Source: Octopus vulgaris (lineage: Eukaryota). From it: a stretch of 64,000 nt of DNA. The translations under genes were made by a program, and so were the position numbers. Below, one piece after another: positions 2,906 through 61,540 of the stretch (position 1 is its first letter; the number at the start of each line of letters is the position of its first letter). The stretch lies in contig OX597817.1 in assembly GCA_951406725.2 (NCBI GenBank), positions 153,698,001 through 153,762,000 of the forward strand, written 5' to 3'. The notes below the pieces were generated by a model, which was not told where the DNA came from, ran no database searches, and saw only the letters and a list, made by a program, of their open reading frames with translations.

Positions 2906-2963
<58 letters not shown>

Positions 2964-23613: not shown

Positions 23614-23644
<31 letters not shown>

Positions 23645-23815: not shown

Positions 23816-23816
23816 A

Positions 23817-23867
<51 letters not shown>

Positions 23868-32872: not shown

Positions 32873-33010
32873 TCCCTCCTTCTTCTTTTTCTTAATCCTT
32901 TCTGCTGAAGAGCGTAAGCTCGAAATGTGAAAGACTTTTCCATTTTTCCAGAGCGTTAAACTAATACACCTGCTTGTTGGCCCACCTGACTTCGTCTTTT
33001 GCATTCTGTA
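32870..33010 (+). mobile_element. Penelope-like terminal-repeat fragment, family A variant, with an inactive-looking hammerhead
   Basis: cttt-CTGCTGA(32902-08)-A-GAGC-gtaa-GCTC-GAAAT-GTG-aaag. The GUG triplet is not cleavable. The fragment follows (TA)n. Confidence 0.65.
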
Positions 33011-33586: not shown

Positions 33587-34800
33587 GGCCGTCCACTAGT
33601 GACCGAGGAAGACCATTGCTGACCTTCAGGAACATTGTGCGCTCTAGGACCAACTTATATTTTGCATTTGCGGCTCCGTTGGTGGCTTAATGATCCTTGC
33701 TCTTGACAAGCATACACGACTGAAAACATTGCAAACCAAGCTTTCCCAATTCCCATCAGTGTGCTTTCGAGCAGTGCGCTTAAGTTCTTCACGCAGAATA
33801 CGTGCTCTCTCAAAAGTGTCGACCCCCTCCTTAACCTGCTTCCTCAATATGTTGCGATGACAGGCATTGCTCTCCCAGTCTGTCTCCGTCATATCACAGG
33901 CCTTTAATGAGGACTTCACACAGTCCTTAAATCGCAGCCTTGGTTTTTGCCAGTGTCTCTTTCCATTCACATGTTCCCCATATAGCATCTGCCTAGGGAT
34001 CCTGCTATCCTTTATTCTAATAAGGTGTCCAGTCCAACGTAACTGGTGCTTGTGCACCATCACCTCGATACCCAAGATATCAGCTGTGCTCAGGACCTGT
34101 GAGTTTTTTTAGGTCCAGCCTACATTCAGAATGTGTCTCAGATATCTCTGATGAAAGCGTTCAAAGAGCCTTACATGATGTTTCTAAAGGGTCCATGTCT
34201 CACATGAGTAAAGGTGTGATATCAGTACACATGCACGATACACAACAATTTTTGTTTGCTTTTTGATGCCATGCTGGGACCAGACACAAGACTGAAGAGA
34301 CCGGAAGGAATCAGTTGCTCTCTGCAGCCTGAAAGATATTTCATCATCCAGGGAGCATGAATGGCTGAGTGTGCTGCCCAGGTAGACACACTTTTCAACC
34401 ACTTTCAGAATTGTTCCTTCAACCAAGTTAGCTGGTTCCATATATGGATTTCCTAATGCAGGCTGGAACACTGCAACAGTCTTGTCCAGGTTAATGCTGA
34501 GTCCAAATGCTTTACAAGAAGCAGAAATACGGTTCATAAGTATTTGCATGTCATCCACTGAATGAGTGACTAAGTCACGGTCATCAACATAATGGAGGTA
34601 ACGAATAAGAAGAGAGTGGAAAACTTTTGAATTGGCAGTAGATCGGCGCAGATTAAAGAGGCAAAAAAAATATCAATATCTGACATATATTCCCAGAGAG
34701 CTAACCTTAGCAAAAGCATGGGTGAAGGTCCCACCATACCACCACCAACATTGACCCAAGCCTCCATCCCATCATGAAATGATTTAATTATAGATACAAA

Positions 34801-41706: not shown

Positions 41707-41760
<54 letters not shown>

Positions 41761-42471
41761 TCTTTCTTTTTTTTCCTTTTTTCCTCCGTTTCCTTTTTTA
41801 CCTTTTCTTTTTTCCTTTTTTTTTCTCTTTTTTTTCCTTGTCAATTTAACATACTTATTTTCTTTTTAGTAGTACTTCATCAATGATTCAATTTCTATTA
41901 AATCCACAACTGGTGGGTCAATACTATCTCCACACATTTCTTGTGCACCTGACGTCCAGGCTTCTCCCTCTATATCTACGTATTGGACTAGCCTACTTTA
42001 TCGTCTGGGGGCGTCCACACAAAATAAAGACATAAGCTAGTTACTTATAGGAACAGACAGAGGAAGTTCTCGTAAAACTGTAATGTAATCGTTGTACGGG
42101 AATTCTTTCAGAGCACCGTTTGAAAGTCTTCTCATTGTAATTTTGAACACTTGCATGAGAAAAAAACATCTAAATTTTTAAATATCGTTAAAGTAATCTT
42201 TCAAAGTATTTACATTTCGATATATTTTGAATGCGAGTCTGCCAAAACGTATTATTTCGCATACAAAAAAAGAATGTCGCAAATCATGAAAAGGAACATG
42301 TATAACAAAGAGCTTATGCTGTACTTTATCTTTTAGTCATATCCGAAGATTGTTAATTTACTTCTCCGCAGTTGGATGGTTCTTCAGCATAGAATCATTC
42401 AATGACTTAGACTGGCTGTTACGAGACTAAATTTATAAAATTATATAAAATGCACGCATGTATATATACGT

Positions 42472-42525
<54 letters not shown>

Positions 42526-42530
<5 letters not shown>

Positions 42531-42716
42531 GCTACTGCACGCATTTTTTCTCTCCTTCTTTCTGTGTTTTTCTCTCTCTGTGTATCTTTCTGTTGAAGAG
42601 CGTAGGCTCGAAACGTTAAAGACTTGTTTTATTTATATTTCCTGAGCGCCATACTAATACAATTGTTCGTTTGTTTTCCACCTGCCTTCGTCTTTTGTTT
42701 ATTTTCATAAAGCTTT
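42526..42716 (+). mobile_element. Penelope-like terminal-repeat fragment, family A (absent from copy 2)
   Basis: It lies between (CT)n and (TA)n; the equivalent position at about 51900 lacks it. It contains the hammerhead-like motif at 42585-42622. Confidence 0.8.
42585..42622 (+). ncRNA. Minimal type-I hammerhead-like motif (family A)
   Basis: Identical to 21585-21622. Confidence 0.55.
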
Positions 42717-42734
42717 ATTATATATATATATATA

Positions 42735-43535
42735 GGATCTTTTCCTTTTTGAACGGCAGACAATTTCTAGTTAACTAAACACTTTAAAACTTCGTATACT
42801 GGTAGAATGTGTCAAAATAAAACATTTTTTTCTCTTGGCTTTCTTGAGAAAATTGTAATTTGTTTGTTTAACGTAGTTTAATTTTTCGAATTTTAACCAA
42901 TCCTATGCTCTCTTTTGAGCTAAAATCATTTGCTGCGTCTAAAACTGAGACACTACCCCCTCAACCTAAACCTAACCCTAATTTTTTTTCTTAATTGTTA
43001 AATTAATTTAATTGTTACGCGTGTAAAAAAAAACCGAAAGCAATGGAGAATGATTTAAACAATTAACAAACAAAATAATTCTATAATTGCATACACACGC
43101 TTTCCGTAACACATGCTTTCCGTATACGTACGGAAAGCGTGTGTATAAAATTATAGAATTATTTTGTTTGTTAATTGTATAAATCATTTTCCATTGCTTT
43201 GGTTTTTTTTTTTTACACGCGTAACAATTAAATTAAGTTAATAATTTAGAAAAAAAATTAGGGTTAGGGTTAGGAGGAGGGTTAGGGTTAGTTACAGGAT
43301 GTTGTCTCAGTTTTAGACGCAGCAAATTATTTTAGTTGAATGGAGGTAATCGATTGGTTAAAATTGCCGAAATGCTCGGATTTTCAGACGAAATATCTTA
43401 CAAACTATAGAATTTCCTCAATAAAGCCAAGAAAAAATGATGTTTTATAAACAAATTCTACCAGTTTACGAAGTTTAAAAGTGTTTAGTTAACTAGAAAT
43501 TGTGTTGACATCTACCGTTCAAAAGGAAAAGATCC
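42735..43535. mobile_element. About 800-bp fold-back/MITE-like DNA element with internal TTAGGG-like repeats
   Basis: Termini ggatcttttcctttt..gaacgg / ccgttcaaaaggaaaagatcc, flanked by TA. Long imperfect arms extend to a central gctttccgta-tacg-tacggaaagc hairpin. The left arm contains (cctaac)n and the right arm (ttaggg)n. Confidence 0.8.
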
Positions 43536-43927
43536 TATATATATATATGTGTCACAGAACTAAAAATTAGGGGCATCCATCATTGAATCGTTCCCAGTTG
43601 TTTTAATTTCTTTAAAAAAATGCTTCATGATACTTTTAAGAGTTACCATCTAACATAAAAAATGACATGACCAAGATCCGTTGAAACTGTAGCAAACAAA
43701 ACGACTTCTAACTGTTTCTCAAATCTGACCCAATTTTCTATGATAAAATATGCTATGTGGTATCACAATTATGAGTGACTACAGTGTCGGGAAGCCTCAA
43801 ACTTGATGCGTTGTCGTTTTTCAAGTATATGGCCTGAAAAATGTCAAAAGTAAAAGAAAATGCAAACGAAATGAAGGATACTAAGGCTTTTAGTAGTATG
43901 TGCTAGCGTATGTACCACTCCTTCACA

Positions 43928-44050
<123 letters not shown>

Positions 44051-44291
44051 AAAAATTACGCTTCCATTCTACAGTGTATGTATGTGTGTGCGTGTGTATT
44101 GTAAATGTGAGCACTTGAGATTAAGATTGTATTAAAAACATTTCTTAATCTTAGAAAAACAATTAGCAATATTAGAAACATGAGACGATTGAATCTATGC
44201 TCTAAGTCGTTTTTATTCAGAAAATTTAATTCAAAATTCAAAATTTTATTTAGCTGCATTGAAATAGAAATTTTATTTATTTATTTAAATA

Positions 44292-44697
44292 GGCGCAGGA
44301 GTGGCTGTGTGGTAAGTAGCTTGCTTACCAACCACATGGTTCCGGGTTCAGTCCCACTGCGTGGCATCTTGGGCAAGTGTCTTCTGCTATAGCCTCCGGC
44401 CGACCAATGTCTTGTGAGTGGATTTGGTAGACGGAAACTGAAAGAAGCCTGTCGTATATATGTATATATATATATATACATATGTATGTGTATATGTTTG
44501 TGTGTCTGTGTCTGTCCCCCCAACATCGCTTGACAACCGATGCTGGTGTGTTTACGTCCCCGTCACTTAGCGGTTCGGCAAAAGAGACCGATAGAGTAAG
44601 TACTGGGCATCCAAAGAATAAGTCCCGGGGTCGATTTGCTCGACTAAAGACGGTGCTCCAGCATGGCCACAGTCAAAAGACTGAAACAAGTAAAAAG
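44292..44697 (+). mobile_element. SINE family 1 copy (counterpart 53371-53770)
   Basis: Full head and tail. Confidence 0.9.
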
Positions 44698-45952
44698 AAA
44701 AAAAAAGAAAGATATTCATTCATATATGTTTTTTTGTTTTTGTTTTTATTACAAATAAAATTCATATGTTTTAACAGTATTCTTGCATTTTGATATTCAT
44801 AATTTTTATTATGCATCTTGGTTCCCGTTCCTTAATGAGCTAATTAAAGTTAGTTATGCCTCAAATCTGCAAATCCAGTTGCGGGCAATTGTCTTGAGAA
44901 GGACGACATTTTTCCAAAGGGTTTTGCCTCTGAAACACCTTCAGTAATTTTTTTTCAAAGGACCAATAAATATTACAAAACATTTTAATTCTATATTCTT
45001 TGTTCTTATTGAAGCAGCGAGTTGCCAGAATCTTTTGCACTCTGAATCTAAGTTCCGTTGCAGTCGGCTCTGCCTTTCAGGGATATAAAATAGGTTCCAT
45101 TGAAGTACAGGAGTCAATGCAAATGGCTTATTCCTCTCCTACTGAAATTGCTGGCCTTGTACCAAAACTTGAAATCATTCTCTGTTGTTACCGATTTTAC
45201 TTTTGACTAATTACAGAAGCCACATATGCACACACATACGTATGTATGTCTGTCTGTCTGTATGTGTGTGTATGCATGTATTGTTATATACATATGTATT
45301 TATATATGAGAGAGGGAGAGAGGGAGAGAGAGAGGAGAGCTCGGTGCATATGCACGTATATATACACAGATTTATACACTCCCCTATATATATATATATT
45401 TATGTAGGAGGGAGTATGGGTGTTTTTATTGTGTGTATTTTCATATTTACAAATTATTTTTATCATATATAATAATAAATATAAGAATAACGATCAGTTT
45501 ATCCTTAAGGCAATGGCGTCGCAATGAATTAATAAATAACAAAAAATAAAATGAAAGCAAACTTTTATCTTTATATCTGAGATGCAGCAATCGTTAAAGT
45601 ATACCTGGATTATAAAAATGAGCAATAGAATTTAAGAATTCTTCTGACAATTCTTTTCCACTCGTCTTTCTACAGTGTTGCAGTCTTCTCCACCTAGTTA
45701 CTACGTCGACTCGTGTCGCTTTATTGTAGATATAGATGGCTAGATGGTTTGAGGTACTAGAAGTTACTTTCTTCATCATGGGTACAGAAAGCTCCTGGTA
45801 ATAGGATTTGAAACTATTTGGGTTTATTTTACTTCTTTTGCAACTGATTATACTAATTGTTATGTCGCAGGTTCAGATGCCTTCTACTCAAATCCACTCC
45901 TACTCTCGACTCCTCGACGTCTAGACTTCTCCCTCTATATCTACGTATTGGG

Positions 45953-46348
45953 AAGGCGGCGAGCTGGCAAAAACGTTAGCGGTATTTCGCCTGCCGTTAC
46001 GTTCTGAGTTCAAATTCCGCCAAGGTCGACTTTGCCTGTTATCCTTTCGGGGTCGATAAATAAAGTACCAGTTACGCACTGGGGTCGATGTAATCGACTT
46101 GATCCCTTTGTCTGTCCTTGTTTGTCCCCTCTGTGTTTAGCCCCTTGTGGGTAATAAAGAAATAGGTATTTCGCCTGCCGTTACGTTCTGAATTCAAATT
46201 CCGCCAAGGTCGACTTTGCTTGTCATCCTTTCGGGGTCGATAAATAAAGTACCAGTTACGCACTGGAGTCGATGTAATCGACTTAATCCCTTTGTCTGTC
46301 CTTGTTTGTCCCCTCTATGTTTAGCCCCCTGTGGGCAATAAAGAAATA
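45953..46348 (+). mobile_element. Head-to-tail dimeric SINE family 3 insertion
   Basis: Two tandem units within one 17-bp TSD, tatatctacgtattggg (45936-45952 and 46349-46365). Confidence 0.9.
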
Positions 46349-46968
46349 TATATCTACGTATTGGGCTAGTCTACTTCATCGTCTGGGGGCGTCCACACAA
46401 CACTAATACAGTATCGAGTGCTAGTCTTCTTGCTTCTAAGCTTGCTTCAACTTCGGATCAACAGTGTCTTTTATTAACATCGCAGAATCAGTTGTTAAAC
46501 ATCGGTAATATACTGATACCAAATCGGTTTATCTGATCATAACGATTCCTCAACAAGAGAAATGTCATGAATCACTGTAACATTTCATTAAAACATTTGC
46601 AGACCAAAAATAATCGAATGACTAACCTTTTGTTATCAATGACTTCTCATTTCTATTCATCCTGGAACCATAATACTTAAGCTGGGAGAAAATTTCCCCC
46701 CGGTGGAAATTTCAGGATTCCAGGTAGAAATTTGAATATTCCAGTAGGAAAAATCATTTGGGGTTGGAACATTCTTCATTTTGTTGACTGATTTTACTAG
46801 ATTTATTTTCCGTAACGTTGATTTTAATCAACGTCACGGAAAATAAATCCTTCCCACTGCCTTGTATTAATTTTAAAAATGTTAAATTAATATATATATA
46901 TATCAATTTAACTAATGTTAAATTAATATATATCAATTCAGCTAATGTTAAATTAATATAAGGCTGTG

Positions 46969-47160
46969 GAAGGCGGCGAACTGGAAGAATCGTTAGTGCA
47001 CCGAGCTAACATTCTGAGTTCGAATTCCGCAGAGGTCGACTTTACCTTTCATCATTCTGGTGTCGATAAAATAAGAACTAGATGATTACTGGGGTCGATG
47101 TCATCGACTGACCCTCTACTCCGAAATTGCTGACCTTGTGCCGAAATTTGAAACCAATAT
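46969..47160 (+). mobile_element. Older SINE family 3 copy (counterpart 56151-56340)
   Basis: ggcggcgaactgg...gagttcgaattccgcagaggtcgactttacc...ttgtgccgaaatttgaaacc. Confidence 0.8.
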
Positions 47161-48261
47161 AAGACTGTGGAATTTATACAATAAATATTGTTATATATAA
47201 GACTATCATGCGTAGGTGGGCGCGAAAAATTGAACTGGATGAAAGAGCGACAGAGGAAAAGTCACATAATGCTGTGGAAGTGGTGATTTGGAGATGTAAT
47301 CTCATATTTGCTTAAAACATACTTGAAAAAAATTTAATGCAAGGAATTAAAACCAGATTGTAGATTAGGTGCATTGAGATCTTGTTCTTCCTGTTTAGCA
47401 TTTTTATACCAGGATATTTACATTGAGCTGTTCACAGCTTCAAGTAGTGTCACATTGTCCTTATAAACAATTATGTCAGTGTTATGTTAATTGGCTTTAT
47501 TTTCGCCTTAACGTCCATCCTATAATCATAAGACACAAAACAGAAGTCTCCAAAAAGTCAATTGACATGCTAAAATTTGCAGCCAAATTTTCCCCATTTT
47601 TCACCGTATTGTCTTCAAATAAAAAAAATAGGAAGTACTCAATGAATAATATAGTCCTTGATACATTGTGTCCGAAGCAAAATAGAATGACCGTCGCCAG
47701 AATATATTTCATCATTGGCCAACCTGGTTGATAAACAGCAAGCACTATTCTTAGAATTTCTATAACAGAACAACTTTATCGATTTTTGGTTTTAATGTTA
47801 TATAACTTAAGTTTATTTAAGTTTGCAGAATTCGGTTAGCACTTTAGTGATATTCAATTAATTATTACGCAATTTATCTGTCTCTTGCTCGTTATCAATT
47901 TCTGTTAATTTTCCGAGAAAGTAGCACTAGAAAACCATTTCGTGAATGTGATACTTATAATTCTATGACAGGTTGATCACATGACGTTTTGAAATGTACA
48001 GTCGCAAAACATTTATAAGGAGTAAGGTTTCTTTTACAGCACCAGTGCTCACACACACATACATACACGCATGCACATGCAAATACATGGACATTTATAT
48101 ATACACATATATGCATGTGTATACACACACACACATACAAACGCTCACATCATAATGCCATAGCTAGACCAATAATCACCTGTTAGAACTTAACATATTT
48201 AAAATGCGCACCATTACTAAGCTCTGGTTGGTTATATGATTGTCCATCCTTAAATATTTTA

Positions 48262-48600
48262 TTGAGCACTTTACCATGTCAACCTGACATGAAACGAAGA
48301 ATCCAGACATTTGAGCTGAAGTGCTCCAAAAGGCTGATAAGCATCCTGTATCTAGAACACAAAATGAGCATCTTTGTCAGGGATCAAGCCAACGCTGCCA
48401 GACAGGAATCACTCCTTGTGCAGGGAAATAGACGAAGGCTTGCCTTGTACGGTCACTATCCTGTCACAACTTCCTGTCCAAAACCATTCTTTAGGCACAG
48501 TTGAAGGAGAGCGAAAGAGGGGCTGACAGAGGAAATTTTGGTATGCCAACATCAAGGACAGGACAGATCACAACACCACGAACTTCCGGTGCATGATGTG
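48262..48600 (+). mobile_element. Degenerate RTE-clade LINE 3' fragment (counterpart 57461-57800)
   Basis: RRIQTFELKCFKRLISILYLEHK..RRRLALYGHVSSHNFLSKTILQAQLKEGERG..W..NIK matches the RTE C-terminus. Confidence 0.85.
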
Positions 48601-48623
48601 AAGAGAGACCGATGGTGACGGCT

Positions 48624-48900
48624 GACTGCAAAAGTGCCGCAGGGAGCTGCACCGGTTAAGGGAACTGATGATGTGCATATCTATATAGGTGCAGGAGTGG
48701 CTGTGTGCATAGGCACAGGAATGGCTGTGTGAATTGGCGCAGGAGTAGCTGTGTGTAAGTAGCTTACTTACCAACCACATAGATCAGGGTTCAATCCCAC
48801 TGCGTGACACCTTCGGCAAGTGTCTTCTACTATTGCCTCGGGCCAACCAAAACATTGAGTGGATTTGGTAGACGGAAACTGAAAGAAGCCAGTCATTTAT
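48624..48900 (+). mobile_element. 5' half of SINE family 1 with a triplicated head (counterpart 57882-58095)
   Basis: Three tandem copies of a ggcgcaggagtggctgtgtg-like 24-mer precede the body. Confidence 0.8.
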
Positions 48901-48925
48901 GTATATATGTGTGTGTGTGTGTGTG

Positions 48926-49015
<90 letters not shown>

Positions 49016-49256
49016 TAAATTTAAATTAAGCAGAAAATGAGGAAAACTTTTGATCAACAAACAATTTGACTACCATCAGTTATTATTTTTTAATACAAAA
49101 CTTTAACATTGCTAGCAGCGTTTCTGCTACCTATATCAGAAAGGAACACGAGAAAATAAACAGATAGAGAATATACATATACATACTTACATGTGCATAA
49201 ACACATACACTTAATTATGTATGAGTGTGTGTCTACTAACAAACATATATACATAC

Positions 49257-49299
<43 letters not shown>

Positions 49300-49447
49300 A
49301 AAAGCAATGAAGATTCAAGTTAATTTAAATGAATTTACTTGAATATGGTACCTAACTTAGATGCACCAAAAAGGAACTATACTGTTTTAACAATACAGTA
49401 ATGTGGGGTGATTATAAGCGAGAAAGAAGCAACAAGAATGGATAGGT

Positions 49448-49538
49448 TTTTAGTACAATCGTTTCATACAAGGACAGGCTTTATTAAAAGTTGCAAAAAT
49501 TACAGCATATAAACGTGTCCCGTACTCATCAGCTAAAA
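49448..49538 (-). ncRNA. Type-I hammerhead ribozyme (family D)
   Basis: Reverse complement of 50066-50156. Confidence 0.8.
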
Positions 49539-50065
49539 TACATGTGAGTTCTCTAGACATCCTATTGGTTGAGGCTATACTCATGAAGTAATGTAGATAA
49601 TTAAGTAACATAAACAGATTTCTAAAGTTCATTAAAGTTCTTTAAAGATGATGTACAGTCTTATCACAGAATTTTAAAAAAGTTTTAATAGCATCACAGA
49701 GAAGGTGACCTAATCCATAGTGCACATATGAATTTCCAGAGATATGATGAGGTATTACATACTCACAGACGACAAATTTATCCATTGTTAATCACAACGA
49801 GGTGGGTCTCAATTCCTGCTTATTAGCATTACAGAGAGGGTGAATTAATCCTTTGTATAGATGCACAATTTCCAATGGTGTAGATGTAAATTTCCAGAGA
49901 AATGAAGAGGAATTTCATATTCACAGGCGATAAATTTATCAATGGTTGAACACAATGAGGTAGGTATCAGTTCTTGTTATATGATTAGGTATTATATGAT
50001 TAATTATCTACATTACTTCATGAGTATAGCCTCAACCAATAGGATGTCTAGAGAACTCACATGTA

Positions 50066-50156
50066 TTTTAGCTGATGAGTACGGGACACGTTTATATGCT
50101 GTAATTTTTGCAACTTTTAATAAAGCCTGTCCTTGTATGAAACGATTGTACTAAAA
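50066..50156 (+). ncRNA. Type-I hammerhead ribozyme (family D)
   Basis: ttttag-CTGATGA(50072-78)-gtacgggaca...tgtccttgtat-GAAAC(50139-43)-gatt-GTA-ctaaaa. It has a canonical core, a perfect 6-bp stem I, an approximately 10-bp stem II and a 2-bp stem III with a near-palindromic loop. Predicted cleavage is after 50150. Confidence 0.8.
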
Positions 50157-50188
50157 ACCTATCCATTCTTGTTGCTTCTTTCTCTCGC

Positions 50189-50253
<65 letters not shown>

Positions 50254-50284
50254 TACATTCATATATATATATATACATATATAC

Positions 50285-50338
<54 letters not shown>

Positions 50339-50810
50339 ATATACACACACATAAAACATATATATATGATTTTATATACATACAATGCACACGCATTTAC
50401 AGAGTTACCCCGAGTACCCCTCTTTTGATCGACATTTCTTTCTATTCCATTGTGGCCTCTAGAAATACATCAGGGTCAATCGGCTCTTCCCATTCCCCTA
50501 CTAAAGAACTGATTTCAATAGCGATTTGTCTCACAAACTCGTGAGATGAATTGTCAAGGATAAGGCATTTGAATTGTATATCAAAGAAGTTTTTGAAGAA
50601 ATATTCGTCATAAATTTTTTTTAAATTCTTCTATCGCCAGAATTAATATGTAACACCGCGTAACTAAAAAGTCACAAACCAATCTTGCAAATCGTTGAGA
50701 ACAAGTCTTTTTCTCTGTGTGTTTCGCAGTATACTAAATTCTATCTGAATTGATGCAGAGGCATCTTGATTGCTCAACCTGCTAAGGTTTAATCGGACAA
50801 ATCAACCTCA

Positions 50811-50991
50811 TCATCATCATCATTGTTCGACCGTGGTCGAAACAATGGAATTTACCATGCTACGCCAGACTTCACGGTCCATCATGGCATTACGGAGGTC
50901 CTGTTGCTGGATGCCTGTATCCCTGGAGATTACATCAGGTTAGGAGAGTGTGCGCCTTCTGGTATTGCGAGTAGATGGCTTCCAGAGGAGA
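50811..50991 (-). mobile_element. 5'-truncated RTE-type LINE insertion with TSD, present only in copy 1
   Basis: Minus strand LLWKPSTRNTRRRTLS*PDVISRDTGIQQQDLRNAMMDREVWRSMVNSIVSTTVEQ* followed by a (TGA)n tail. 12-bp TSD aaatcaacctca at 50799-50810 and 50992-51003; there is a single empty site at about 58996. Confidence 0.9.
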
Positions 50992-51037
50992 AAATCAACC
51001 TCAGCACTGACTTTTGAAGGCTTGATCTGAACTGTTT

Positions 51038-51137
51038 NNNNNNNNNNNNNNNNNNNNNNNNNNNNNNNNNNNNNNNNNNNNNNNNNNNNNNNNNNNNNNN
51101 NNNNNNNNNNNNNNNNNNNNNNNNNNNNNNNNNNNNN
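51038..51137. other. Assembly gap (100 N)
   Basis: Directly visible; exactly 100 N is the usual placeholder for a gap of unknown size. Confidence 0.99.
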
Positions 51138-51843
51138 ATATACTCTTTCTTTTTTTTCCTTTTTTCCTCCGTTTCCTTTTTTACCTTTTCTTTTTTCCTT
51201 TTTTTTTCTCTTTTTTTCCTTGTCAATTTAACATACTTATTTTCTTTTTAGTAGTATTTCATCAATGATTCAATTTCTATTAAATCCACAACTGGTGGGT
51301 CAATACTATCTCCACACATTTCTTGTGCACCTGACGTCCAGGCTTCTCCCTCTATATCTACGTATTGGACTAGCCTACTTTATCGTCTGGGGGCGTCCAC
51401 ACAAAATAAAGACATAAGCTAGTTACTTATAGGAACAGACAGAGGAAGTTCTCGTAAAACTGTAATGTAATCGTTGTACGGGAATTCTTTCAGAGCACCG
51501 TTTGAGTCTTCTCATTGTAACATTTGCATGAGAAAAAACATCTAAATTTTTAAATATCGTTAAAATAATCTTTCAAAGTATTTACATTTCGATATATTTT
51601 GCATGCGAGTCTGCCAAAACGTATTATTTCGCATACAAAAAAAGAATGTCGCAAATCATGAAAAGGAACATGTATAACAAAGAGCTTATGCTGTACTTTA
51701 TCTTTTAGTCATATCCGAAGATTGTTAATTTACTTCTCCGCAGTTGGATGGTTCTTCAGCATAGAATCATTCAATGACTTAGACTGGCTGTTACGAGACT
51801 AAATTTATAAAATTATATAAAATGCACGCATGTATATATACAT

Positions 51844-51936
<93 letters not shown>

Positions 51937-51938
<2 letters not shown>

Positions 51939-52718
51939 ATCTTTTCCTTTTGAACGGCAGACAATTTCTAGTTAACTAAACACTTTAAAACTTCGTATAC
52001 TGGTAGAATGTGTCAAAATAAAACATTTTTTCTCTTGGCTTTCTTGAGAAAATTGTAATTTGTTTGTTTAACGTAGTTTAATTTTTCGAATTTTAACCAA
52101 TCCTATGCTCTCTTTTGAGCTAAAATCATTTGCTGCGTCTAAAACTGAGACACTACCCCTCAACCTAATTTTTTTTTCTTAATTGTTAAATTAATTTAAT
52201 TGTTACGCGTGTAAAAAAAAACCGAAAGCAATGGAAAATGATTTAAACAATTAACAAACAAAATAATTCTATAATTGCATACACACGCTTTCCGTAACAC
52301 ATGCTTTCCGTATACGTACGAAAGCGTGTGTATAAAATTATAGAATTATTTTGTTTGTTAATTGTTTAAATCATTTTCCATTACTTTCGTTTTTTTTTAC
52401 ACGCGTAACAATTAAATTAATTTAACAATTAAGAAAAAAAATTAGGGTTAGGGTTAGGGGAGGGTTAGGCTTAGTTACAGGATGTTGTCTCAGTTTTAGA
52501 CGCAGCAAATGATTTTAGTTGAATGGAGGTAATCGATTGGTTAAAATTGCCGAAATGCTCGGATTTTCAGACGAAATATCTTACAAACTATAGAATTTCC
52601 TCAATAAAGCCAAGAAAAAATGATGTTTTATAAACAAATTCTACCAGTTTACGAAGTTTAAAAGTGTTTAGTTAACTAGAAATTGTGTTGACATCTACCG
52701 TTCAAAAGGAAAAGATCC
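51937..52718. mobile_element. Fold-back element, counterpart of 42735-43535
   Basis: Same ggatc...gatcc termini, with shorter telomere-like tracts. Confidence 0.8.
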
Positions 52719-54810
52719 TATATATATATATGTGTCACAGAACTAAAAATTAGGGGCATCCATCATTGAATCGTTCCCAGTTGTTTTAATTTCTTTAAAA
52801 AATGCTTCATGATACTTTTAAGAGTTACCATCTAACATAAAAATGACATGACCAAGATCCGTTGAAACTGTAGCAAACAAAACGACTTATAACTGTTTCT
52901 CAAATCTGACCCAATTTTCTATGATAAAATATGCTATGTGGTATCACAATTATGAGTGACTACGGTGTCGGGAAGCCTCAAACTTGATGCGTTGTCGTTT
53001 TTCAGTATATGGCCTGAAAAATGTTAAAAGTAAAAGAAAATGTAAACGAAATGAAGGATACTAAGGCTAGCGTATGTACCACTCCTTCACAAACAATAAT
53101 AATAATAATAATAACAACAACAACAACGCAAAAATTACGCTTCCATTCTACAGTGTATGTATGTGTGTGCGTGTGTATTGTAAATGTGAGCACTTGAGAT
53201 TAAGATTGTATTAAAAACATTCCTTAATCTTAGAAAAACAATTAGCAATATTAGAAACATGAGACGATTGAATCTTTGCTCTAAGTCGTTTTTATTCCGA
53301 AAATTTAATTCAAAATTCAAAATTTTATTTAGCTGCATTGAAATAGAAATTTTATTCATTTATTTATATAGGCGCAGGAGTGGCTGTGTGGTAAGTAGCT
53401 TGCTTACCAACCACATGGTTCCGGGTTCAGTCCCACTGCGTGGCATCTTGGGCAAGTGTCTTCTGCTATAGCCTCCGGCCGACCAATGCCTTGTGAGTGG
53501 ATTTGGTAGACGGAAACTGAAAGAAGCCTGTCGTATATATGTATATATATATATATATGTATGTGTATATGTTTGTGTGTCTGTGTTTGTCCCCCCAACA
53601 TCGCTTGACAACTGATGCTGGTGTGTTTACGTCCCCGTAATCTAGCGGTTCGGCAAAAGAGACCGATAGAGTAAGTACTAGGCATCCAAAGAATAAGTCC
53701 CGGGGTCGAGTTGCTCGACTAAAGGCGGTGCTCCACCATGGCCACAGTCAAAAGACTGAAACAAGTAAAAAGAAAAAAAAAGAAAGATATTCATTCATAC
53801 ATGTTTTTTTGTTTTTGTTTTTATTACAAATAAAATTCATATGTTTTAACAGTATTCTTGCATTTTGATATTCATAATTTTTATTATGCATCTTGGTTCC
53901 CGTTCCTTAATGAGCTAATTAAAGTTAGTTATGCCTCAAATCTGCAAATCCAGTTGCGGGCAATTGTCTTGAGAAGGACGACATTTTTCGAAAGGGTTTT
54001 GCCTCTGAAACACCTTCAGTAATTTTTTTTCAAAGGACCAATAAATATTACAAAACATTTTAATTCTATATTCTTTGTTCTTATTGAAGCAGCGAGTTGG
54101 CAGAATCTTTTGCACTCTGAATCTAAGTTCCGTTACAGTCGGCTCTGCCTTTCAGGGATATAAAATAGGTTCCATTGAAGTACAGGAGTCAATGCAAATG
54201 ACTTATTCCTCTCCTACTGAAATTGCTGGCCTTGTACCAAAACTTGAAATCATTCTCTGTTGTTACTTTTGACTAATTACAGAAGCCATATATGCACACA
54301 CATACGTATGTATGTCTGTCTGTATGTATGTGTGTGTATGCATGTGTGTATGCATGTATTGTTATATACATATGTATTTATATATGAGAGAGGGAGAGAG
54401 AGGGAGAGAGAGAGAGGAGTGTTCGGTGCATATGCATGTATATATACACAGATTTATACACTCCCCTATATATATATATTTATGTAGGTGGGAGTATGGG
54501 TGTTTTTATTGTGTATATTTTCATATTTACAAATTATTTTTATCATATATAATAATAAATATAAGAATAACGATCAGTTTATCCTTAAGGCAATGGCGTG
54601 GCAATGAATAAATAAATAACAAAAAATAAAATGAAAGCAAACTTTTATCTTTATATCTGAGATGCAGCAATCGTTAAAGTATACCTGGATTATAAAAATG
54701 AGCAATAGAATCTAAGAATTCTTCTGACAATTCTTTTCCACTCGTCTTTCTACAGTGTTGCAGTCTTCTCCACCTAGTTACTACGTCGACTCGTGTCGCT
54801 TTATTGTAGA

Positions 54811-55197
54811 CTAGCAGTATCGCCCGGCATTGCTCGGGTTTGTAAGGGAAATAACTATATAAGCATTTTTAGAGAGTTATAGCCAAAAAATGCATTAAAA
54901 ATGGAAAAAAAAATTATGGTAATTTTTTTTTAAATCGTTGACTCATCGTAGACATTTTTAGAGAGTTACTTCCCTTTATTTAAAAAATATGCGTTAAAAT
55001 GGGAAAACATTATGGTAAATTATTTTAAAAATCGTACACTCATCGTAGACGCGCGCTAATACCCAGAAGGGCTCGATATGAATCACGACTATAAGATACC
55101 TGATTTTGGTTAAACTGCATCGCAAAATGTGGGAGTAGTTAGGAATCTAAATCGAAGGGGACAGACACTCACACAACTACAGTTTTATATATAAAGA
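54811..55197 (-). mobile_element. Non-autonomous Helitron-like element H1, present only in copy 2
   Basis: The minus strand reads TCtttatatat...gatactgCTAG. The empty site in copy 1 (ttattgtaga|tatagatgg, about 45730) shows insertion between A and T on the minus strand with no TSD. Confidence 0.9.
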
Positions 55198-58091
55198 TAT
55201 AGATGGCTAGATGGTTTGATGTACTAGAAGTTACTTTCTTCATCATGGGTACAGAAAGCTCCTGGTAATAGGATTTGAAACTATTTGGGTTTATTTTACT
55301 TCTTTTGCAATACTTTAGCGATTAAGTTATGACAGAAAAGAACTGATTATACTAATTGTTACGTCGCACATTCAGATGCTTTCTACTCAACTCCACTCCT
55401 ACTCTCGACTCCTCGACGTCTAGACTTCTCCCTCTATATCTACGTATTGGGTCGATGTAATCGACTTAATCCCTTTGTCTGTCCTTGTTTGTCCCCTCTA
55501 TGTTTAGCCCCCTGTGGGCAATAAAGAAATATATATCTACGTATTGGGCTAGTCTACTTCATCGTCTGGGGGCGTCCACACAACACTAATACAGTATCGA
55601 GTGCTAGTCTTCTTGCTTCTAAGCTTGCTTCAACTTCGGATCAACAGTGTCTTTTATTAACATCGCAGAATCAGTTGTTAAACATCGGTAATATACTGAT
55701 GCCAAATCGATTTATCTGATTATAACGATTCCTCAACAAGAGAAATGTCATGAATCACTGTAACATTTCATTAAAACATTTGCAGGCCAAAAGTAATCGA
55801 ATGACTAACCTTTTGTTATCAATGACTTCTCATTTCTATTCATCCTGGAACCATAATACTTAAGCTGAGAGAAAATTTCACCCCGGTGGAAATTTCAGGA
55901 TTCCAGGTAGAAATTTGAATATTCCAGTAGGAAAAATCATTTGGGGTTGGAAAATTCTTCATTTTTTTTACTGATTTTACTAGATTTATTTTCTGTAACG
56001 TTGATTTTAATCAACATCACGGAAAATAAATCCTTCCCACTGCCTTGTATTAATTTTTAAAATGTTAAATTAATATATATATATATCAATTTAACTAATG
56101 TTAAATTAATATATATCAATTCAGCTAATGTTAAATTAATATAAGGCTGTGGAAGGCGGCGAACTGGAAGAATCGTTAGTGCACCGAGCTAACATTCTGA
56201 GTTCGAATTCCGCAGAGGTCGACTTTACCTTTCATCATTCTGGTGTCGATAAAATAAGAACTAGATGATTACTAGGGTCGATGTCATCGACTGACCCTCT
56301 ACTCCGAAATTGCTGACCTTGTGCCGAAATTTGAAACCAATATAAGACTGTGGAATTTATACAATAAATATTGTTATATATAAGACTATCATGCGTAGGT
56401 GGGCGCGAAAAATTGAACTGGATGAAAGAGCGACAGAGGAAAAGTCACATAATGCTGTGGAAGTGGTGATTTGGAGATGTAATCTCATATTTGCTTAAAA
56501 CATACTTGAAAAAAATTTATTGCAAGGAATTAAAACCGGATTGCAGATTAGGTGCATTGAGATCTTGTTCCTCCTGTTTAGCATTTTTATACCAGGATAC
56601 TTACATTGAGCTGTTCACAGCTTCAAGTAGTGTCACATTGTCCTTACAAACAATTATGTTGGTGTTATGTTAATTGGCTTTATTTTCGCCTTAACGTCCA
56701 TCCTATAATCATAAGACACTAAACAGAAGTCTCCAAAAAGTCAATTGACATGCTAAAATTTGCAGCCAAATCTTCCCCATTTTTCACCGTATTGTCTTCA
56801 AATAAAAAAAATAGGAAGTACTCAATGAATAATATAGTCCTTGATACATTGTGTCCGAAGCAAAATAGAATGACCATCGCCAGAATATATTTCATCATTG
56901 GCCAACCTGGTTGATAAACAGCAAGCACTATTCTTAGAATTTCTATAACAGAACAACTTTAGCGATTTTTGGTTTTAATGTTATATAACTTAAGTTTATT
57001 TAAGTTTGCAGAATTCGGTTAGCACTTTAGTGATATTCAATTAATTATTACACAATTTATCTGTCTCTTGCTCGTTATTAATTTCTGTTAATTTTCCGAG
57101 AAAGTAGCACTAGAAAACCATTTCGTGAATGTGATACTTATAATTCTATGACAGGTTGATCACATGACGTTTTGAAATGTACAGTCGCAAAACATTTATA
57201 AGGAATAAGGTTTCTTTTACAGCACCAGTGCTCACACACACATACACGCATGCACATGCAAATACATGGACATTTATATATACACATATATGCATGTGTA
57301 TACACACACACACACACGTACACGCACACACATACAAACGCTCACATCATAGCTAGCCATAACTAGACCAATAATCACATGTTAGAACTTAACATATTTA
57401 AAATGCGCACCATTACTAAGCTCTGGTGGGTTATATGATTGTCCATCCTTAAATATTTTATTGAGCACTTTACCATGTCAACCTGACATGAAACGAAGAA
57501 TCCAGACATTTGAGCTGAAGTGCTTCAAAAGGCTGATAAGCATCTTGTATCTAGAACACAAAATGAGCATCTTTGTCAGGTATCAAGCCAACGCTGCCAG
57601 ACAGGAATCACTCCTTGTGCAGGGAAATAGACGAAGGCTTGCCTTGTACGGTCACGTATCCAGTCACAACTTCCTGTCCAAAACCATTCTTCAGGCACAG
57701 TTGAAGGAGGGCGAAAGAGGGGCCGACAGAGAAAAGTTTTGGTCTGCCAACATCAAGGTCAGGACAGATCACAACACCACGAACTTCCGGTGCATGATGT
57801 TGAGACCGATGGCGACGGCTGACTGCAAAAGTGCCGCAGGGAGCTGCACCAGTTAATGGAACTGAAGATGTGCATATCTATATAGGTGCAGGAGTGGCTG
57901 TGTGCATAGGCGCAGGAATGGCTGTGTGAATTGGCGCAGGAGTAGCTGTGTGTAAGTAGCTTACTTACCAACCACATAGTTCAGGGTTCAATCCCACTGC
58001 GTGACACCTTCGGCAAGTGTCTTCTACTATTGCCTCGGGCCAACCAAAACATTGAGTGGATTTGGTAGACGAAAACTGAAAGAAGCCCGTC

Positions 58092-58170
<79 letters not shown>

Positions 58171-58410
58171 TAAATTTAAATTAAGCAGAAAATGAGGAAA
58201 ACTTTTGATCAACAAACAATTTAACTACCATCAGTTATTATTTTTTAATACAAAACTTTAACATTGCTAGCAGCATTTCTGCTATCTATATCAGAAAGGA
58301 ACACGAGAAAATAAACAGATAGAGAATATACATATACATACTTATATGTGCATAAACACATACACTTAATTATGTATGAGTGTGTATCTACTAACAAACA
58401 TATATATACA

Positions 58411-58483
<73 letters not shown>

Positions 58484-58520
58484 CACACATATACATTCAT
58501 ATATATATATATATATATAC

Positions 58521-58569
<49 letters not shown>

Positions 58570-59138
58570 TAACAACATATATATATGATTTTATATACAT
58601 ACAATGCACACGCATTTACAGAGTTACCCCGAGTACCCCTCTTTTGATCGACATTTCTTTCTATTCCATTGTGGCCTCTAGACATACATCAGGGTCAATC
58701 GGCTCTTCCCATTCCCCTACTAAATAACTGATTTCAATAGCGATTTGTCTTACAAACTCGTGAGATGAATTGTCAAGGATAAGGCATTTGAATTGTATAT
58801 CAAAGAAGTTTTTGAAGAAATATTCATCACAAATTTTTTAAAATTCTTCTATCGCCAGAATTAATATGTAACACAGTGTAACTAAAAAGTCACAAACCAG
58901 TCTTTTTCTCTGTGTGTTTCGCAGTATACAAAATTCTATCTGAATTGATGCAGAGGCATCTTGATTGCTCAACCTGCTAGGGTTTTAATCGGACAAATCA
59001 ACCTCAGCACTGACTTTTGAAGCCTTGATCTGAACTGTTTTGCCGAACTGCTAAGTTACGGAGACTTAAACGAACCAATACCAGTTCTCAAGTGGTGAGA
59101 GGGACAAACACACACACACACACACACATGTACATATA

Positions 59139-60051: not shown

Positions 60052-61540
60052 GGAGAATTAACAAAAAAAAAGACGGAGACAGGTGGTGTAGACAACAAGC
60101 AGATGTATTAGTATAACGCTCAGGAAGTGAAAAAGCCTACGCTCTTCCACAGAAACAAGGAGAGAAAATAAAGAAAGTTTAGTGACTAGAGATCTATCAC
60201 GGAGAATGCCGGACTGAAGGGTCATACAGGAAAGCCAGGAAGAAGGGGAAATAATAAAGTATTGGTGATCCCAAAACGAAAGTGCGCGTGCGTGTATTTG
60301 AGAGTTTGTATGTGCGTGTGGAAAAGGGCTGGTGATCTTGACGTGTGCGTGTGCGTATGTGTAGGTGTGAAAATGTGGGTCTGGGAAGTGGTCAGTGCTG
60401 ATGCGTGCGTGGTGGTGTGTTGTGTGGTTAATGTGTTGTGTGGTGTGTGGTATGGTGTGAAGGTGTTGGGAGGTGGGAAGGCGAGAGTGGGGAAAGCAAT
60501 GGAGGTATGTGGGTTTGGTTGAGGGTGGGGGTAGAGGTGGAGTATGTGAGTAGAGGGGGGATGGGGTAGAGGTGGAGTATGTGCGAGTGGGTGTAAGGGA
60601 TTGGGTGGGGTGGGATGGGGAAGTATAGGGAAGATGGGGTGGGCTTATGAGTGAGGGGTGACGATAAAGGAGGAAGGAGAAGGTATGAAGAGAAGAGAGG
60701 AGAGTAGGAGTGAAGAGCAGAAGTAGGAGTCGGAGCAAGAGAGGAAAGGTTGGTGGGAGGATGTAGGTATGAGGGGGAGAGAGGCGAGGGGAGGAGGTTA
60801 GATGAAGAGGGGAGGAGAGTTGAGCCCATATGGTGGAAAGGAGCGAAGAGAAGATTAATCCTTGTTCACGGCGCAAACGGGAGTCCAGATGGCTTCTGTG
60901 GAAGGACAGTCCGAACACGGACAGGCGTTACAAAGAGTGACCGGCAGAGCGGAAATGGCGCGAGACCGGGGTGTCATTGCCGAGTCAGGTGTCTCGGAGG
61001 TGTTCCGCGAACCGGTCAACCAAGCGGCGTCCGTTTGCCCAACGTATAGAGAAGGGCAGAGAGAGCACGAGATGCAGTAGATGATATTGGTAGAAGTGCA
61101 GGTGAAGGAGTCAGTGATGTGATAGGGTCGATGATGGGTGTTGGTGAGGAGGGTGGTGTTGGAAAGGTAAGGGCAAGTGCGGCAGTGTGGGCGGAAGCAG
61201 GGGAATGATCCGGGTTGGGAGGCTGGGTTAGGGAAGAAGCTGTGGACCAAGAGGTCTCTTAGGTTGTGCGCTCGTTTGAAGGAGGGGAGGGGTCGGTTAG
61301 GGAAGATGTGCGAAGTAAAGAGGTCGGACTGGAGTCGCCGAAAGGCTCGGAGAATGGTACGCTGGAGAGGTAGGGTGGTGGGGTGGTAGGTAAGGGGAAA
61401 TGGGAGGCGGGAGACGGTGGGGCGGGTTCAAGGGGAGAGAACAGATGCTGGCAAGAGCGGTGTGGATAGTGGTGAGGGGATATCCGCGTAGGATGAAGTG
61501 GTGAGCCATGAGTTGAGACTGAGTCTCGACCTTAGGATTT
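60050..61540 (-). mobile_element. Penelope-like retroelement (5' truncated; RT thumb + GIY-YIG + family-A terminal repeat)
   Basis: Minus strand: AHHFILRGYP (RT thumb), PGSFPCFRPHCRTCP..FTCTSTNIIYCISCSLCPSLYVGQT (GIY-YIG with a Cys motif), then after a frameshift RFAEHLRD..VSRHF..GLSFH. The 3' end carries the family-A repeat with a broken hammerhead (CTGTGGA-A-GAGC-gtag-GC at 60152-60135). Confidence 0.9.

What the first reader, a model, noticed from the sequence alone, without database searches (positions are those of the whole stretch)
49298..50189. Young, polymorphic 0.9-kb non-coding element with two inverted, apparently intact hammerheads
Seen in the sequence: identical 184-bp inverted arms (49421-49604 and 50000-50183) each contain a canonical CUGAUGA/GAAAC hammerhead. 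It has a perfect 6-bp stem I (ttttag/ctaaaa), an approximately 10-bp stem II and a GUA cleavage triplet (cut after 50150 on the plus strand and at the mirror site near 49454 on the minus strand). The roughly 400-bp interior has no ORF but contains two diverged repeats of about 140-170 bp (acagaga(a/g)ggtga...aatttccagaga...aaatttatc...gaggt). The element sits in (TA)n and is absent from the other copy of this locus (about 58440-58490). Inference: it is a recently mobilised non-autonomous Penelope/retrozyme-like element. A transcript from either strand would contain one sense ribozyme and fold into a 184-bp dsRNA stem, a potential ADAR or siRNA substrate.
Basis: partly seen in the sequence, partly recalled or inferred. 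Interest (0 to 1): 0.8.

Follow-up and report, generated by a model that had tools for sequence, protein, structure and literature searches.

The report
Truncated double Penelope-like retrotransposon insertion
The 0.9-kb "element with two inverted hammerheads" is two dead, 5'-truncated copies of an abundant autonomous Penelope-like retrotransposon (Hydra clade) inserted head-to-head into a (TA)n microsatellite; this is a known insertion pattern and not a new kind of mobile element.

Summary
There are 185-bp perfect inverted arms (49420-49604 and 50000-50184). Each carries a complete type-I hammerhead, cut after 50150 (+) and 49454 (-). The unit sits in (TA)n and is absent from the homologous block at about 58400-58490.

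The unit is two 5'-truncated copies of one retroelement joined head-to-head. One is a 696-nt copy on the minus strand (49993->49298). The other is a 190-nt copy on the plus strand (50000->50189). The "arms" are only their overlap. At least 23 other genomic loci show such pairs with different junction points.

The full unit is about 4.63 kb and encodes a 949-aa protein. [quoted passage not shown] The hammerhead lies 216 nt upstream of the ATG in tandem copies. Diverged relatives (Argonauta, corals, a second family in this genome) carry hammerheads at the same place with different helices. The extra 122 nt (49298-49419) is the PLE "tail".

"Young" is supported. "Polymorphic" is plausible: the empty copy may be the other haplotype across a 100-N gap. 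"Non-autonomous/retrozyme-like" is not supported. Verdict: a new member of a known kind, of low interest.

The parts
49298..49993 (-). Main 5'-truncated PLE copy ('long form', 696 nt). It corresponds to unit positions about 4053-4630 plus the tail, and is entirely 3'UTR, hammerhead and tail with no coding sequence.
   Evidence: It is contiguous with other copies at 97-99.7% identity. It maps to R4053-4750 of the L052 reference unit.
49298..49419 (-). The 'tail': the first ~114-122 nt of the next tandem unit (5'UTR, ending about 53 nt before the ATG of the master). It lies between the two alternative cDNA start sites and is predicted to form two hairpins.
   Evidence: In L052 and L050 the same sequence runs on from the hammerhead arm into the ATG. 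The fold of 49447->49298 has z=-4.0, with 0 of 200 shuffles as stable. It is present at exactly one outer end of each of 26 paired insertions.
49448..49538 (-). Type-I hammerhead ribozyme motif of the main copy; predicted cut between 49454 and 49453.
   Evidence: Descriptor scan; identical to the plus-strand copy.
49605..49993 (-). 3'UTR segment of the PLE containing two diverged repeats spaced 158 nt (49717-49823 and 49875-49980).
   Evidence: The same two repeats occur in all longer copies.
49994..49999 (.). 6-nt filler (ATATGA) at the head-to-head junction. Together with the next TTA it repeats the adjacent ATATGATTA at 49979-49987.
   Evidence: (D6). Other loci show 1-13 nt overlaps or 1-24 nt fillers at this junction.
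50000..50189 (+). Inverted partner copy ('short form', 190 nt): the last ~190 nt of the unit, ending ...CTCTCGCG directly at (TA)n, with no tail.
   Evidence: Maps to R4443-4636. End sequence compared with 22 other pairs.
50066..50156 (+). Type-I hammerhead ribozyme motif of the partner copy; predicted cut after 50150 (GUA|C).
49268..49297 (.). Left (TA)n target microsatellite.
50190..50220 (.). Right (TA)n target microsatellite.
58400..58490 (.). Empty site: uninterrupted (ACAT)n(TA)n in the homologous block B.
51038..51137 (.). 100-N scaffold gap that exactly separates homologous blocks A (41755-51037) and B (51138-59040).

Best explanation
The region 49298-50189 is one insertion event of an autonomous Penelope-like retrotransposon (PLE) of the Hydra clade into a (TA)n microsatellite. 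It left two 5'-truncated, non-coding copies joined head-to-head.

Shown by sequence:
- The family's full unit is about 4.63 kb: 5'UTR ('tail'), a 949-aa ORF (telomerase-like RT plus C-terminal GIY-YIG nuclease), a 1.6-kb 3'UTR and a hammerhead about 40 nt before the unit end.
- The window holds a 696-nt copy on the minus strand that ends at the distal end-point (with tail).
- It also holds a 190-nt copy on the plus strand that ends at the proximal end-point (no tail).
- Both abut (TA)n on the outside and meet at a 6-nt filler.

Inferred mechanism (from Frangieh et al. 2024, PMC11167929, on an Anolis PLE):
- The RT-nuclease nicks both strands of the AT-rich target.
- Each 3'-OH primes cDNA synthesis at one of two internal start sites of a longer-than-unit RNA. 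In this family both sites abut TA-rich runs: CGC|UUAUAA and UUUUUG|AAUAUAU.
- Both cDNAs stop early and are joined by microhomology or filler.
- Because every copy contains sequence on both sides of the scissile bond, the template RNA was not cleaved at this 3' hammerhead.
- The ribozyme's likely role is 5' processing of tandem or read-through transcripts of master copies, 216 nt upstream of the ATG. It has no likely role in this dead copy.

The window copy itself is inert: it has no ORF and no known promoter. If transcribed through, it folds into a 185-bp perfect hairpin that masks both hammerhead strands.
For: Family and insertion pattern:
- The arm has at least 43 near-identical scored copies (1098 first-look candidates), many in inverted pairs with variable spacing.
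- In 23 unique pairs, plus 3 complex ones, the two copies are truncated at different, locus-specific points. All lie in (TA)n, and each pair has exactly one short and one long end.
- Longer copies extend into an 875-976-aa open frame.
- L052 and L050 show the direct upstream partial copy (pLTR) running through hammerhead and tail into the ATG.

Protein:
- Motifs PADKTG (DKT), RIRWKTY (RWK), YRDD, CKCRIKSKC (CxCX5C), VIY...YIG, CQLC and CVH match the published Hydra-clade diagnosis, together with (TA)n targeting and canonical hammerheads (PMC8557442 section 11).
- AF2 model with pLDDT 76; top PDB fold hits are TERTs.
- The C-terminal domain's top fold hits are the GIY-YIG enzymes T4 EndoII, I-TevI, UvrC and Hpy188I.

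Hammerhead:
- Hammerheads occur at equivalent positions, often with an inverted upstream copy, in Argonauta hians, Oculina and metagenome relatives and in a second family in this genome. Their stems I and II differ in sequence but still pair.
- Dual opposite-strand hammerheads 100-700 bp apart were already attributed to truncated PLEs (PMC4209133).
- The tail at one end only and the inverted 5'-truncated copy are described PLE features (PMC8557442).

Age:
- Nearest copies differ by 2-5 of 581 nt.
Against: - Pfam and PDB sequence searches find no domain in the ORF or in its family profile, so RT and GIY-YIG assignment rests on motifs and predicted folds. The GIY-YIG fold E-values are weak (0.05-1).
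- Rfam does not recognise the hammerhead, and the 106-nt region's MFE is no better than shuffles (z=0.29). Cleavage is untested.
- The unit (4.63 kb) and the tail (~114-122 nt) are larger than published for Hydra elements (<3 kb) and PLE tails (30-40 bp).
- No phylogeny against reference Hydra sequences was made.
- The short-form junction reads CGCG|TATA, with a G that is not in the master (CGCTTATAA), which simple annealing-primed initiation does not explain.
- Frangieh et al. saw no strand difference in start-site use in vitro, whereas here the two sites are always split between the two ends.
Confidence: 0.9

Rival explanations
1. One reading: a discrete non-autonomous PLE-derived or retrozyme-like element of 0.9 kb. 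It would have 184-bp terminal inverted arms and a private 400-bp interior, and would be mobilised as a unit.
For: The unit is non-coding, is bounded by (TA)n, and is absent from the homologous block. Animal retrozymes are thought to derive from PLE pLTRs (bioRxiv 10.64898/2026.07.22.740005).
Against: No other locus repeats this exact architecture. Junction points and arm lengths differ in every pair. The interior and the 122-nt left extension are collinear with the 3'UTR and 5'UTR of the ORF-bearing unit. There are no direct tandem hammerhead units here or among the 40 scored arm copies.
Confidence: 0.04
2. Same element, different mechanism. A single target-primed cDNA started at the distal (tail) site, snapped back on itself or switched template to make the inverted copy. 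The GIY-YIG nuclease then resolved the intermediate by cutting one tail off at the proximal site. That would give one long and one short end.
For: Several pairs are near-perfect palindromes truncated at the same position (R4181/4181, 4249/4248, 4222/4218), as snap-back predicts. The D. virilis nuclease needs the tail for recognition, and Craig et al. suggest nuclease-mediated resolution. The model also explains the 26/26 heterotypic ends.
Against: Most pairs, including the window's (696 vs 190 nt), are strongly asymmetric, which needs two independent truncations or large deletions. The Anolis PLE protein cleaves and extends both strands in vitro.
Confidence: 0.25
3. The inverted duplication is a long-read or assembly artefact (for example a chimeric palindromic read) near a contig end, not a real genomic structure.
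For: The locus lies 850 bp from a 100-N gap, inside a block that is duplicated across that gap.
Against: The same kind of structure recurs at 23 or more independent loci on many chromosomes, each with its own junction and (TA)n flanks. It is also the textbook PLE insertion pattern in other species.
Confidence: 0.03
4. A foldback, MITE-like DNA transposon with long terminal inverted repeats.
For: Perfect 185-bp inverted repeat and an AT-rich target.
Against: The arms are not terminal on the left: 122 nt lie outside the left arm. Arm length varies between loci. The family master encodes an RT plus GIY-YIG nuclease, not a transposase. Copies show a 5'-truncation series typical of retrotransposition.
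Confidence: 0.01

Closest known systems
Hydra clade of C-terminal EN+ Penelope-like elements (Craig et al. 2021, PMC8557442)
   Same: Single ORF with RT followed by a GIY-YIG nuclease. DKT instead of DKG, an RWK motif, a CxCX5C linker, CxxC and CxH around the catalytic E and N, and no conserved CCHH. Canonical hammerhead in the pLTR, insertion into (TA)n, and aquatic invertebrate hosts including Mollusca.
   Different: The unit is about 4.63 kb rather than <3 kb. The extra length comes from two N-rich low-complexity inserts (residues about 485-577 and 664-806, unstructured in the model) and a 1.6-kb 3'UTR. The tail is ~114-122 nt rather than 30-40 bp. Hammerhead stem II carries a roughly 45-nt distal extension. 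Clade membership was not tested by phylogeny.
PLE minimal type-I hammerheads (Cervera and de la Pena 2014, PMC4209133)
   Same: Type-I topology with the full catalytic core. Helix III is very short (2 bp) and its ACGAUUGU segment is self-complementary, allowing a dimeric helix III (-7.8 kcal/mol). The motif lies in the pLTR. That paper reports pairs on opposite strands 100-700 bp apart and attributes them to truncated PLEs.
   Different: Stem II is much longer than the 7-8 bp described for Schistosoma PLEs. Activity is untested.
Poseidon PLE of Anolis carolinensis (PAc; Frangieh et al. 2024, PMC11167929)
   Same: Two adjacent internal start sites for reverse transcription define the 'tail'. 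AT-rich targets, cleavage and extension of both strands, and use of uncleaved RNA as template.
   Different: In PAc the start sites lie inside the ORF and showed no strand preference in vitro. Here they lie in the 5'UTR next to TA-rich runs, and in 26 of 26 genomic pairs they are used once each, one per end.
Metazoan non-LTR retrozymes
   Same: Non-coding, carry a type-I hammerhead, and are PLE-related.
   Different: Retrozymes are direct tandem arrays of short units that yield circular RNAs. This locus has two inverted copies and belongs to an ORF-bearing family.

Membership tests
Penelope-like element (PLE) | Reverse transcriptase most similar to telomerase RT | tested here: met
   AF2 model of the 949-aa ORF has pLDDT 76. 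The top Foldseek PDB hits are TERTs (3du5_A at E=8.9e-8; Candida, yeast and human telomerase), ahead of retron, DRT and group II RTs. A YRDD catalytic motif is present. Pfam sequence search is silent.
Penelope-like element (PLE) | GIY-YIG endonuclease domain fused to the RT | tested here: met
   VIY...YIG, R..H, E and N are invariant in the alignment. The domain model's top PDB hits are T4 EndoII (prob 0.98), I-TevI (0.93), UvrC GIY-YIG and Hpy188I. E-values are weak (0.05-1).
Penelope-like element (PLE) | pLTR/partial-tandem organisation, inverted 5'-truncated upstream copy, and a 'tail' at one end | tested here: met
   L052 and L050 show a direct partial copy followed by a full unit. 23 unique head-to-head pairs were found, and the tail is at exactly one outer end in 26 of 26.
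Hydra clade of PLEs | DKT (not DKG), RWK motif, CxCX5C linker, CxxC and CxH flanking E and N, no conserved CCHH | tested here: met
   PADKTG, RIRWKTY, CKCRIKSKC, CQLC and CVH are present. The invariant columns of A1 and A3 contain these cysteines and no CCHH set. Compared with PMC8557442 section 11.
Hydra clade of PLEs | Insertion into (TA)n | tested here: met
   Both outer flanks are (TA)n in all 23 pairs examined, including the window.
Hydra clade of PLEs | Phylogenetic placement of the RT within the clade | not tested
The nearest outside proteins (35-46% identity) are from Argonauta hians and stony corals.
Hammerhead ribozyme, type I (PLE minimal form) | Conserved core C3-A9, G12-A14, A15.1-U16.1 and H17, with helices I, II and III in type-I order | tested here: met
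   UUUUAG-CUGAUGA-[stem II]-GAAA-C-GAUU-G-U-A|CUAAAA at 50066-50156.
Hammerhead ribozyme, type I (PLE minimal form) | Helices maintained in diverged relatives at the same position in the element | tested here: met
   Six outside loci and a second family in this genome carry hammerheads next to the ORF, with different stem I and II sequences that still pair. One example is TGCTTC/GAAGCA versus TGCCTC/GAGGCA. Two subfamilies of this family differ at two stem II positions and both keep pairing. No formal covariation statistic was computed.
Hammerhead ribozyme, type I (PLE minimal form) | Match to curated Rfam hammerhead models | tested here: not met
   No hit at gathering score or at E<=10. The models also miss all hammerheads of the relatives, so the test is uninformative for this subclass.
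Hammerhead ribozyme, type I (PLE minimal form) | Self-cleavage at H17 | not testable with these tools
   Needs in vitro transcription. PLE hammerheads are reported to be weak alone and protein-assisted.
Non-LTR retrozyme | Direct tandem repeats of short hammerhead-bearing units; family without an ORF | tested here: not met
   The two motifs are inverted, not tandem. The family master encodes a 949-aa protein.
TIR / foldback DNA transposon | Fixed terminal inverted repeats at both termini | tested here: not met
   122 nt lie outside the left arm. Arm length differs at every locus.

The most novel reading that the evidence does not exclude
In all 26 paired insertions of this family, one outer end stops at the proximal start site and the other at the distal start site about 114 nt further on. 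The two sites are separated by a two-hairpin RNA module and each abuts a TA-rich run. If this holds genome-wide, each integration uses both reverse-transcription start sites exactly once, one per nicked DNA strand. That would be a genomic footprint of an obligately asymmetric, probably dimeric, double-strand target-primed mechanism with (TA)n annealing, which in vitro work on PLEs has not shown. A by-product would be many young, perfect hairpin-forming loci in a cephalopod-like genome that could feed dsRNA, ADAR or small-RNA pathways.
Probability: 0.3. Interest if true: 0.5.

Novelty: new member of a known kind. Interest (0 to 1): 0.25.

Why it matters
For genome annotation, this locus should be masked as a PLE (Hydra-clade) fragment pair, not reported as a new ribozyme-bearing element.

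The family is large and young. The arm has at least 1098 first-look candidates, many frames of about 980 aa are intact, and copies differ by less than 1%. It is therefore probably still active and contributes presence/absence variation at (TA)n microsatellites. It may also contribute to assembly breaks such as the gap-flanked duplicate here.

The regular short-plus-long end pattern and the structured tail give a cheap genomic read-out for testing models of PLE integration, which are still poorly understood.

Tried and rejected
- Rfam at gathering score and at E<=10 on the locus and on six related loci: no hammerhead was found anywhere, so the result was rejected as uninformative for PLE minimal hammerheads.
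- Unconstrained folding of 50060-50165: no better than shuffles. The 91-nt core's MFE does contain helices I and II.
- Pfam on the 345-aa, 875-aa and 949-aa frames and on 30 family members, and a PDB sequence-profile search: all empty. I therefore used predicted folds.
I replaced it with loci from the genome search and the look-up of encoding contigs.
- My first two hammerhead descriptors missed the second in-genome family because its helix III is 4 bp with an 8-nt loop. It was found by eye and with a relaxed descriptor.
- MITE/foldback transposon, retrozyme and assembly artefact were considered and rejected (see rivals).
- Target-site duplication cannot be read in (TA)n.
- A covariance model of the hammerhead was not built because the stem II loops are too variable and the distinct sequences too few.

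Full report
**The observation.** The sequence is as described.
- The two arms are 49420-49604 and 50000-50184: 185 nt, 100% complementary, 395 nt apart.
- Each arm holds a complete type-I hammerhead: UUUUAG-CUGAUGA-stem II-GAAA-C-GAUU-G-U-A|CUAAAA, at 50066-50156 (+) and 49448-49538 (-).
- Stem I has 6 bp. Stem II has 7 contiguous pairs that continue around a roughly 45-nt distal loop. Stem III has 2 bp. The cut is predicted after 50150 and after 49454.
- A descriptor of this stringency hits shuffled 64-kb sequence 0.02 times.
- The interior has two 79%-identical repeats spaced 158 nt and no ATG ORF above 70 aa.
- The unit is flanked by pure (TA)n.
- The flanks align to 55441-58454 and 58400-59009, where the 892 bp are missing.
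- Rfam reports no hammerhead, even at E<=10.

**What it is.** The 185-nt arm has at least 43 near-identical scored copies in the 2.8-Gb genome (1098 first-look candidates). Many lie in inverted pairs whose spacing ranges from 24 to about 2450 nt.
- Aligning the window unit to these loci shows that 49298-49993 is one contiguous piece in other copies. The right arm is a second, inverted copy of the last ~190 nt of the same piece.
- The window unit is therefore a 696-nt copy on the minus strand (49993->49298) joined head-to-head, through a 6-nt filler (49994-49999), to a 190-nt copy on the plus strand (50000->50189). The "arms" are the overlap of the two.
- In 23 unique pairs, plus three complex ones, the junction point differs at every locus. 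Overlaps are 1-13 nt or fillers 1-24 nt, and both outer flanks are always (TA)n.
- This is a 5'-truncation series, which is typical of retrotransposition and not of a TIR element.

**The master element.** Longer copies extend upstream into an open frame of 875-984 aa.
- In L052 and L050 a direct partial copy (pLTR) runs through the hammerhead and the 122-nt left extension of the window unit into an ATG 53 nt further on.
- The unit is about 4630 nt: tail/5'UTR, ATG at 175, stop at 3024, a 1.6-kb 3'UTR, the hammerhead at 4504-4594, and the unit end.
- The hammerhead cut lies 216 nt upstream of the next ATG.
- The window's main copy covers unit positions about 4053-4630 plus the tail, so it is wholly non-coding.

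**The protein.** Pfam and PDB sequence searches are silent.
- The motifs are clear: PADKTG, RIRWKTY, YRDD, CKCRIKSKC, VIY...YIG, R..H, CQLC, E, N and CVH. They are invariant in alignments with 29 homologues at 33-41% identity.
- The AF2 model (pLDDT 76) is disordered only in two N-rich inserts.
- Its best PDB fold matches are telomerase RTs.
- The C-terminal 150 aa best match the GIY-YIG enzymes T4 EndoII, I-TevI, UvrC and Hpy188I, with weak E-values.
- These are the published diagnostics of the Hydra clade of PLEs: DKT, RWK, CxCX5C, CxxC and CxH, no CCHH, (TA)n targeting, canonical hammerheads, and aquatic invertebrates including molluscs (PMC8557442).
- The best outside hits are in Argonauta hians and stony corals.
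- The genome's size and repeat content suggest an octopod. This is an inference and was not verified.

**Is the hammerhead real?** Comparative evidence says yes, as a motif.
- Relatives carry hammerheads beside the ORF, often in direct pLTR pairs plus an inverted upstream copy. These relatives are two Argonauta loci, Oculina, one NCBI assembly contig (GCA_024449705.1, species not identified) and two ENA metagenome contigs.
- Their stems I and II differ in sequence but still pair. The Argonauta element also has a long stem II with a large AT-rich loop and GAAAC-UGCA-GUA.
- A second Hydra-like family in this genome has a 51-nt hammerhead in 11 of 12 loci, 133 nt upstream of the ATG in L062.
- Rfam misses all of these, so its silence at the window is uninformative.
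- Helices I and II are part of the MFE of the 91-mer. The helix III segment ACGAUUGU is self-complementary (-7.8 kcal/mol), which fits the dimeric mode proposed for PLE hammerheads (PMC4209133).
- Catalysis is untested.

**Mechanism.** Every pair has one end at the proximal site (...CTCGCG|TATA) and one at the distal site about 114 nt further on (...TTGCTTTTTG|TATA), 26 of 26.
- The intervening tail folds into two hairpins (z=-4.0).
- In the master, both sites are followed by TA-rich runs.
- This fits what is known for PLEs: a tail at only one end, two internal RT start sites, cleavage and extension of both target strands, AT-rich targets, and uncleaved RNA as template.
- All copies retain both sides of the scissile bond, so the template was not cut at this hammerhead.
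- I infer twin target-primed synthesis from the two nicked strands of (TA)n, early termination, and end joining.
- A snap-back plus nuclease-resolution model remains possible, because several pairs are near-perfect palindromes.

**Age and polymorphism.** The nearest copies differ by 2-5 of 581 nt, and 25 copies have an identical arm. Many frames are intact.
- Recently active PLE families have been reported in Octopus vulgaris (PMC13282606).
- Homologous blocks A (41755-51037) and B (51138-59040) run exactly from the first base after a 100-N gap to the last base before it.
- The right flank occurs only twice in the genome.
- This is the signature of two overlapping contig ends, probably haplotypes, that were not merged. 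A true tandem duplication with the gap at its junction is not excluded, since mismatch is 0.65-4.4% by block.
- If the blocks are haplotypes, the insertion is heterozygous, so "polymorphic" may be right.

A transcript through both copies would form a 185-bp perfect hairpin (-401.6 kcal/mol for 49420-50184). This is a plausible dsRNA substrate. It would also pair the ribozyme with its antisense, so cleavage in that context is unlikely.
- There is no evidence for a retrozyme-type tandem array or for a separate non-autonomous master.

**Verdict.** This is an ordinary, recent, dead-on-arrival double insertion of a Hydra-clade PLE, a new member of a known kind. The only modestly new points are the family's unusual size, its long structured tail, and the strict short-plus-long end rule.

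Noticed in passing
window 41755-51037 vs 51138-59040; gap 51038-51137: A ~9-kb block is duplicated exactly across a 100-N scaffold gap: the first base after the gap aligns to 41755 and the last base before it aligns to 59040. Mismatch is 0.65-4.4% with several indels. This is probably an uncollapsed haplotype overlap (false duplication) rather than a real tandem duplication.
   Followed up: partly
23 unique paired loci plus L047, L050 and L052, e.g. L031, L035, L043: Every head-to-head PLE pair has exactly one short-form end and one long-form (tail) end, 26 of 26. Under independent use of the two ends the chance is about 1.5e-8. Several pairs are near-perfect palindromes truncated at the same unit position.
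   Followed up: partly
window 49298-49447 (-): The region from the hammerhead to the long-form end folds far better than shuffles (z=-4.0). It forms two hairpins that lie between the two cDNA end-points. In the master, both end-points are followed by TA-rich runs (UUAUAA and AAUAUAU) that could anneal to a (TA)n target. The short-form junction carries a G that is not in the master.
   Followed up: partly
L052 ORF residues about 485-577 and 664-806 (L052:2171-5017): There are two asparagine-rich low-complexity inserts, between the RT thumb and the linker and before the CxCX5C motif. Relatives lack them, and they are disordered in the AF2 model. They account for much of the extra ORF length.
   Followed up: no
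window 30708-31121 (+) and 60855-61427 (-): Open frames with GIY-YIG-like motifs (CVYSMPCRC..YKGET..R..EH, and IIYCISC..YVGQT with an upstream CxxC). These look like remnants of other PLE families. A LINE-like RT fragment lies at 33644-34672 (-).
   Followed up: no
window 32900-32953 (+): A loose hammerhead-like match (CUGAAGA...GAAA, stem I 5 bp, stem II 4 bp, long helix III region) sits about 30 nt from a (TA)n boundary. It may be a decayed PLE end or a chance match.
   Followed up: no
window 44290-44702, 53368-53777, 13246-13651, 23395-23835, 2709-3118 and others: A ~400-nt SINE-like repeat is present in at least 12 copies in the window at 75-92% identity. A 184-nt unit is tandemly duplicated at 45981-46348, with dispersed copies at about 39747, 25267 and 59137.
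   Followed up: no
own genome: The genome holds several further Hydra-like PLE families. RT identity to this family is 83%, 75% and 62%. Another family has many intact 727-aa frames. First-look candidates number 14,882 and 22,588, so this clade is a major and apparently active component of the genome.
   Followed up: partly
L054 7318-7561 (Argonauta hians): A 118-nt perfect inverted repeat lies immediately downstream of the Argonauta PLE's (TA)n end. It gave spurious miRNA-family hits in Rfam.
   Followed up: no
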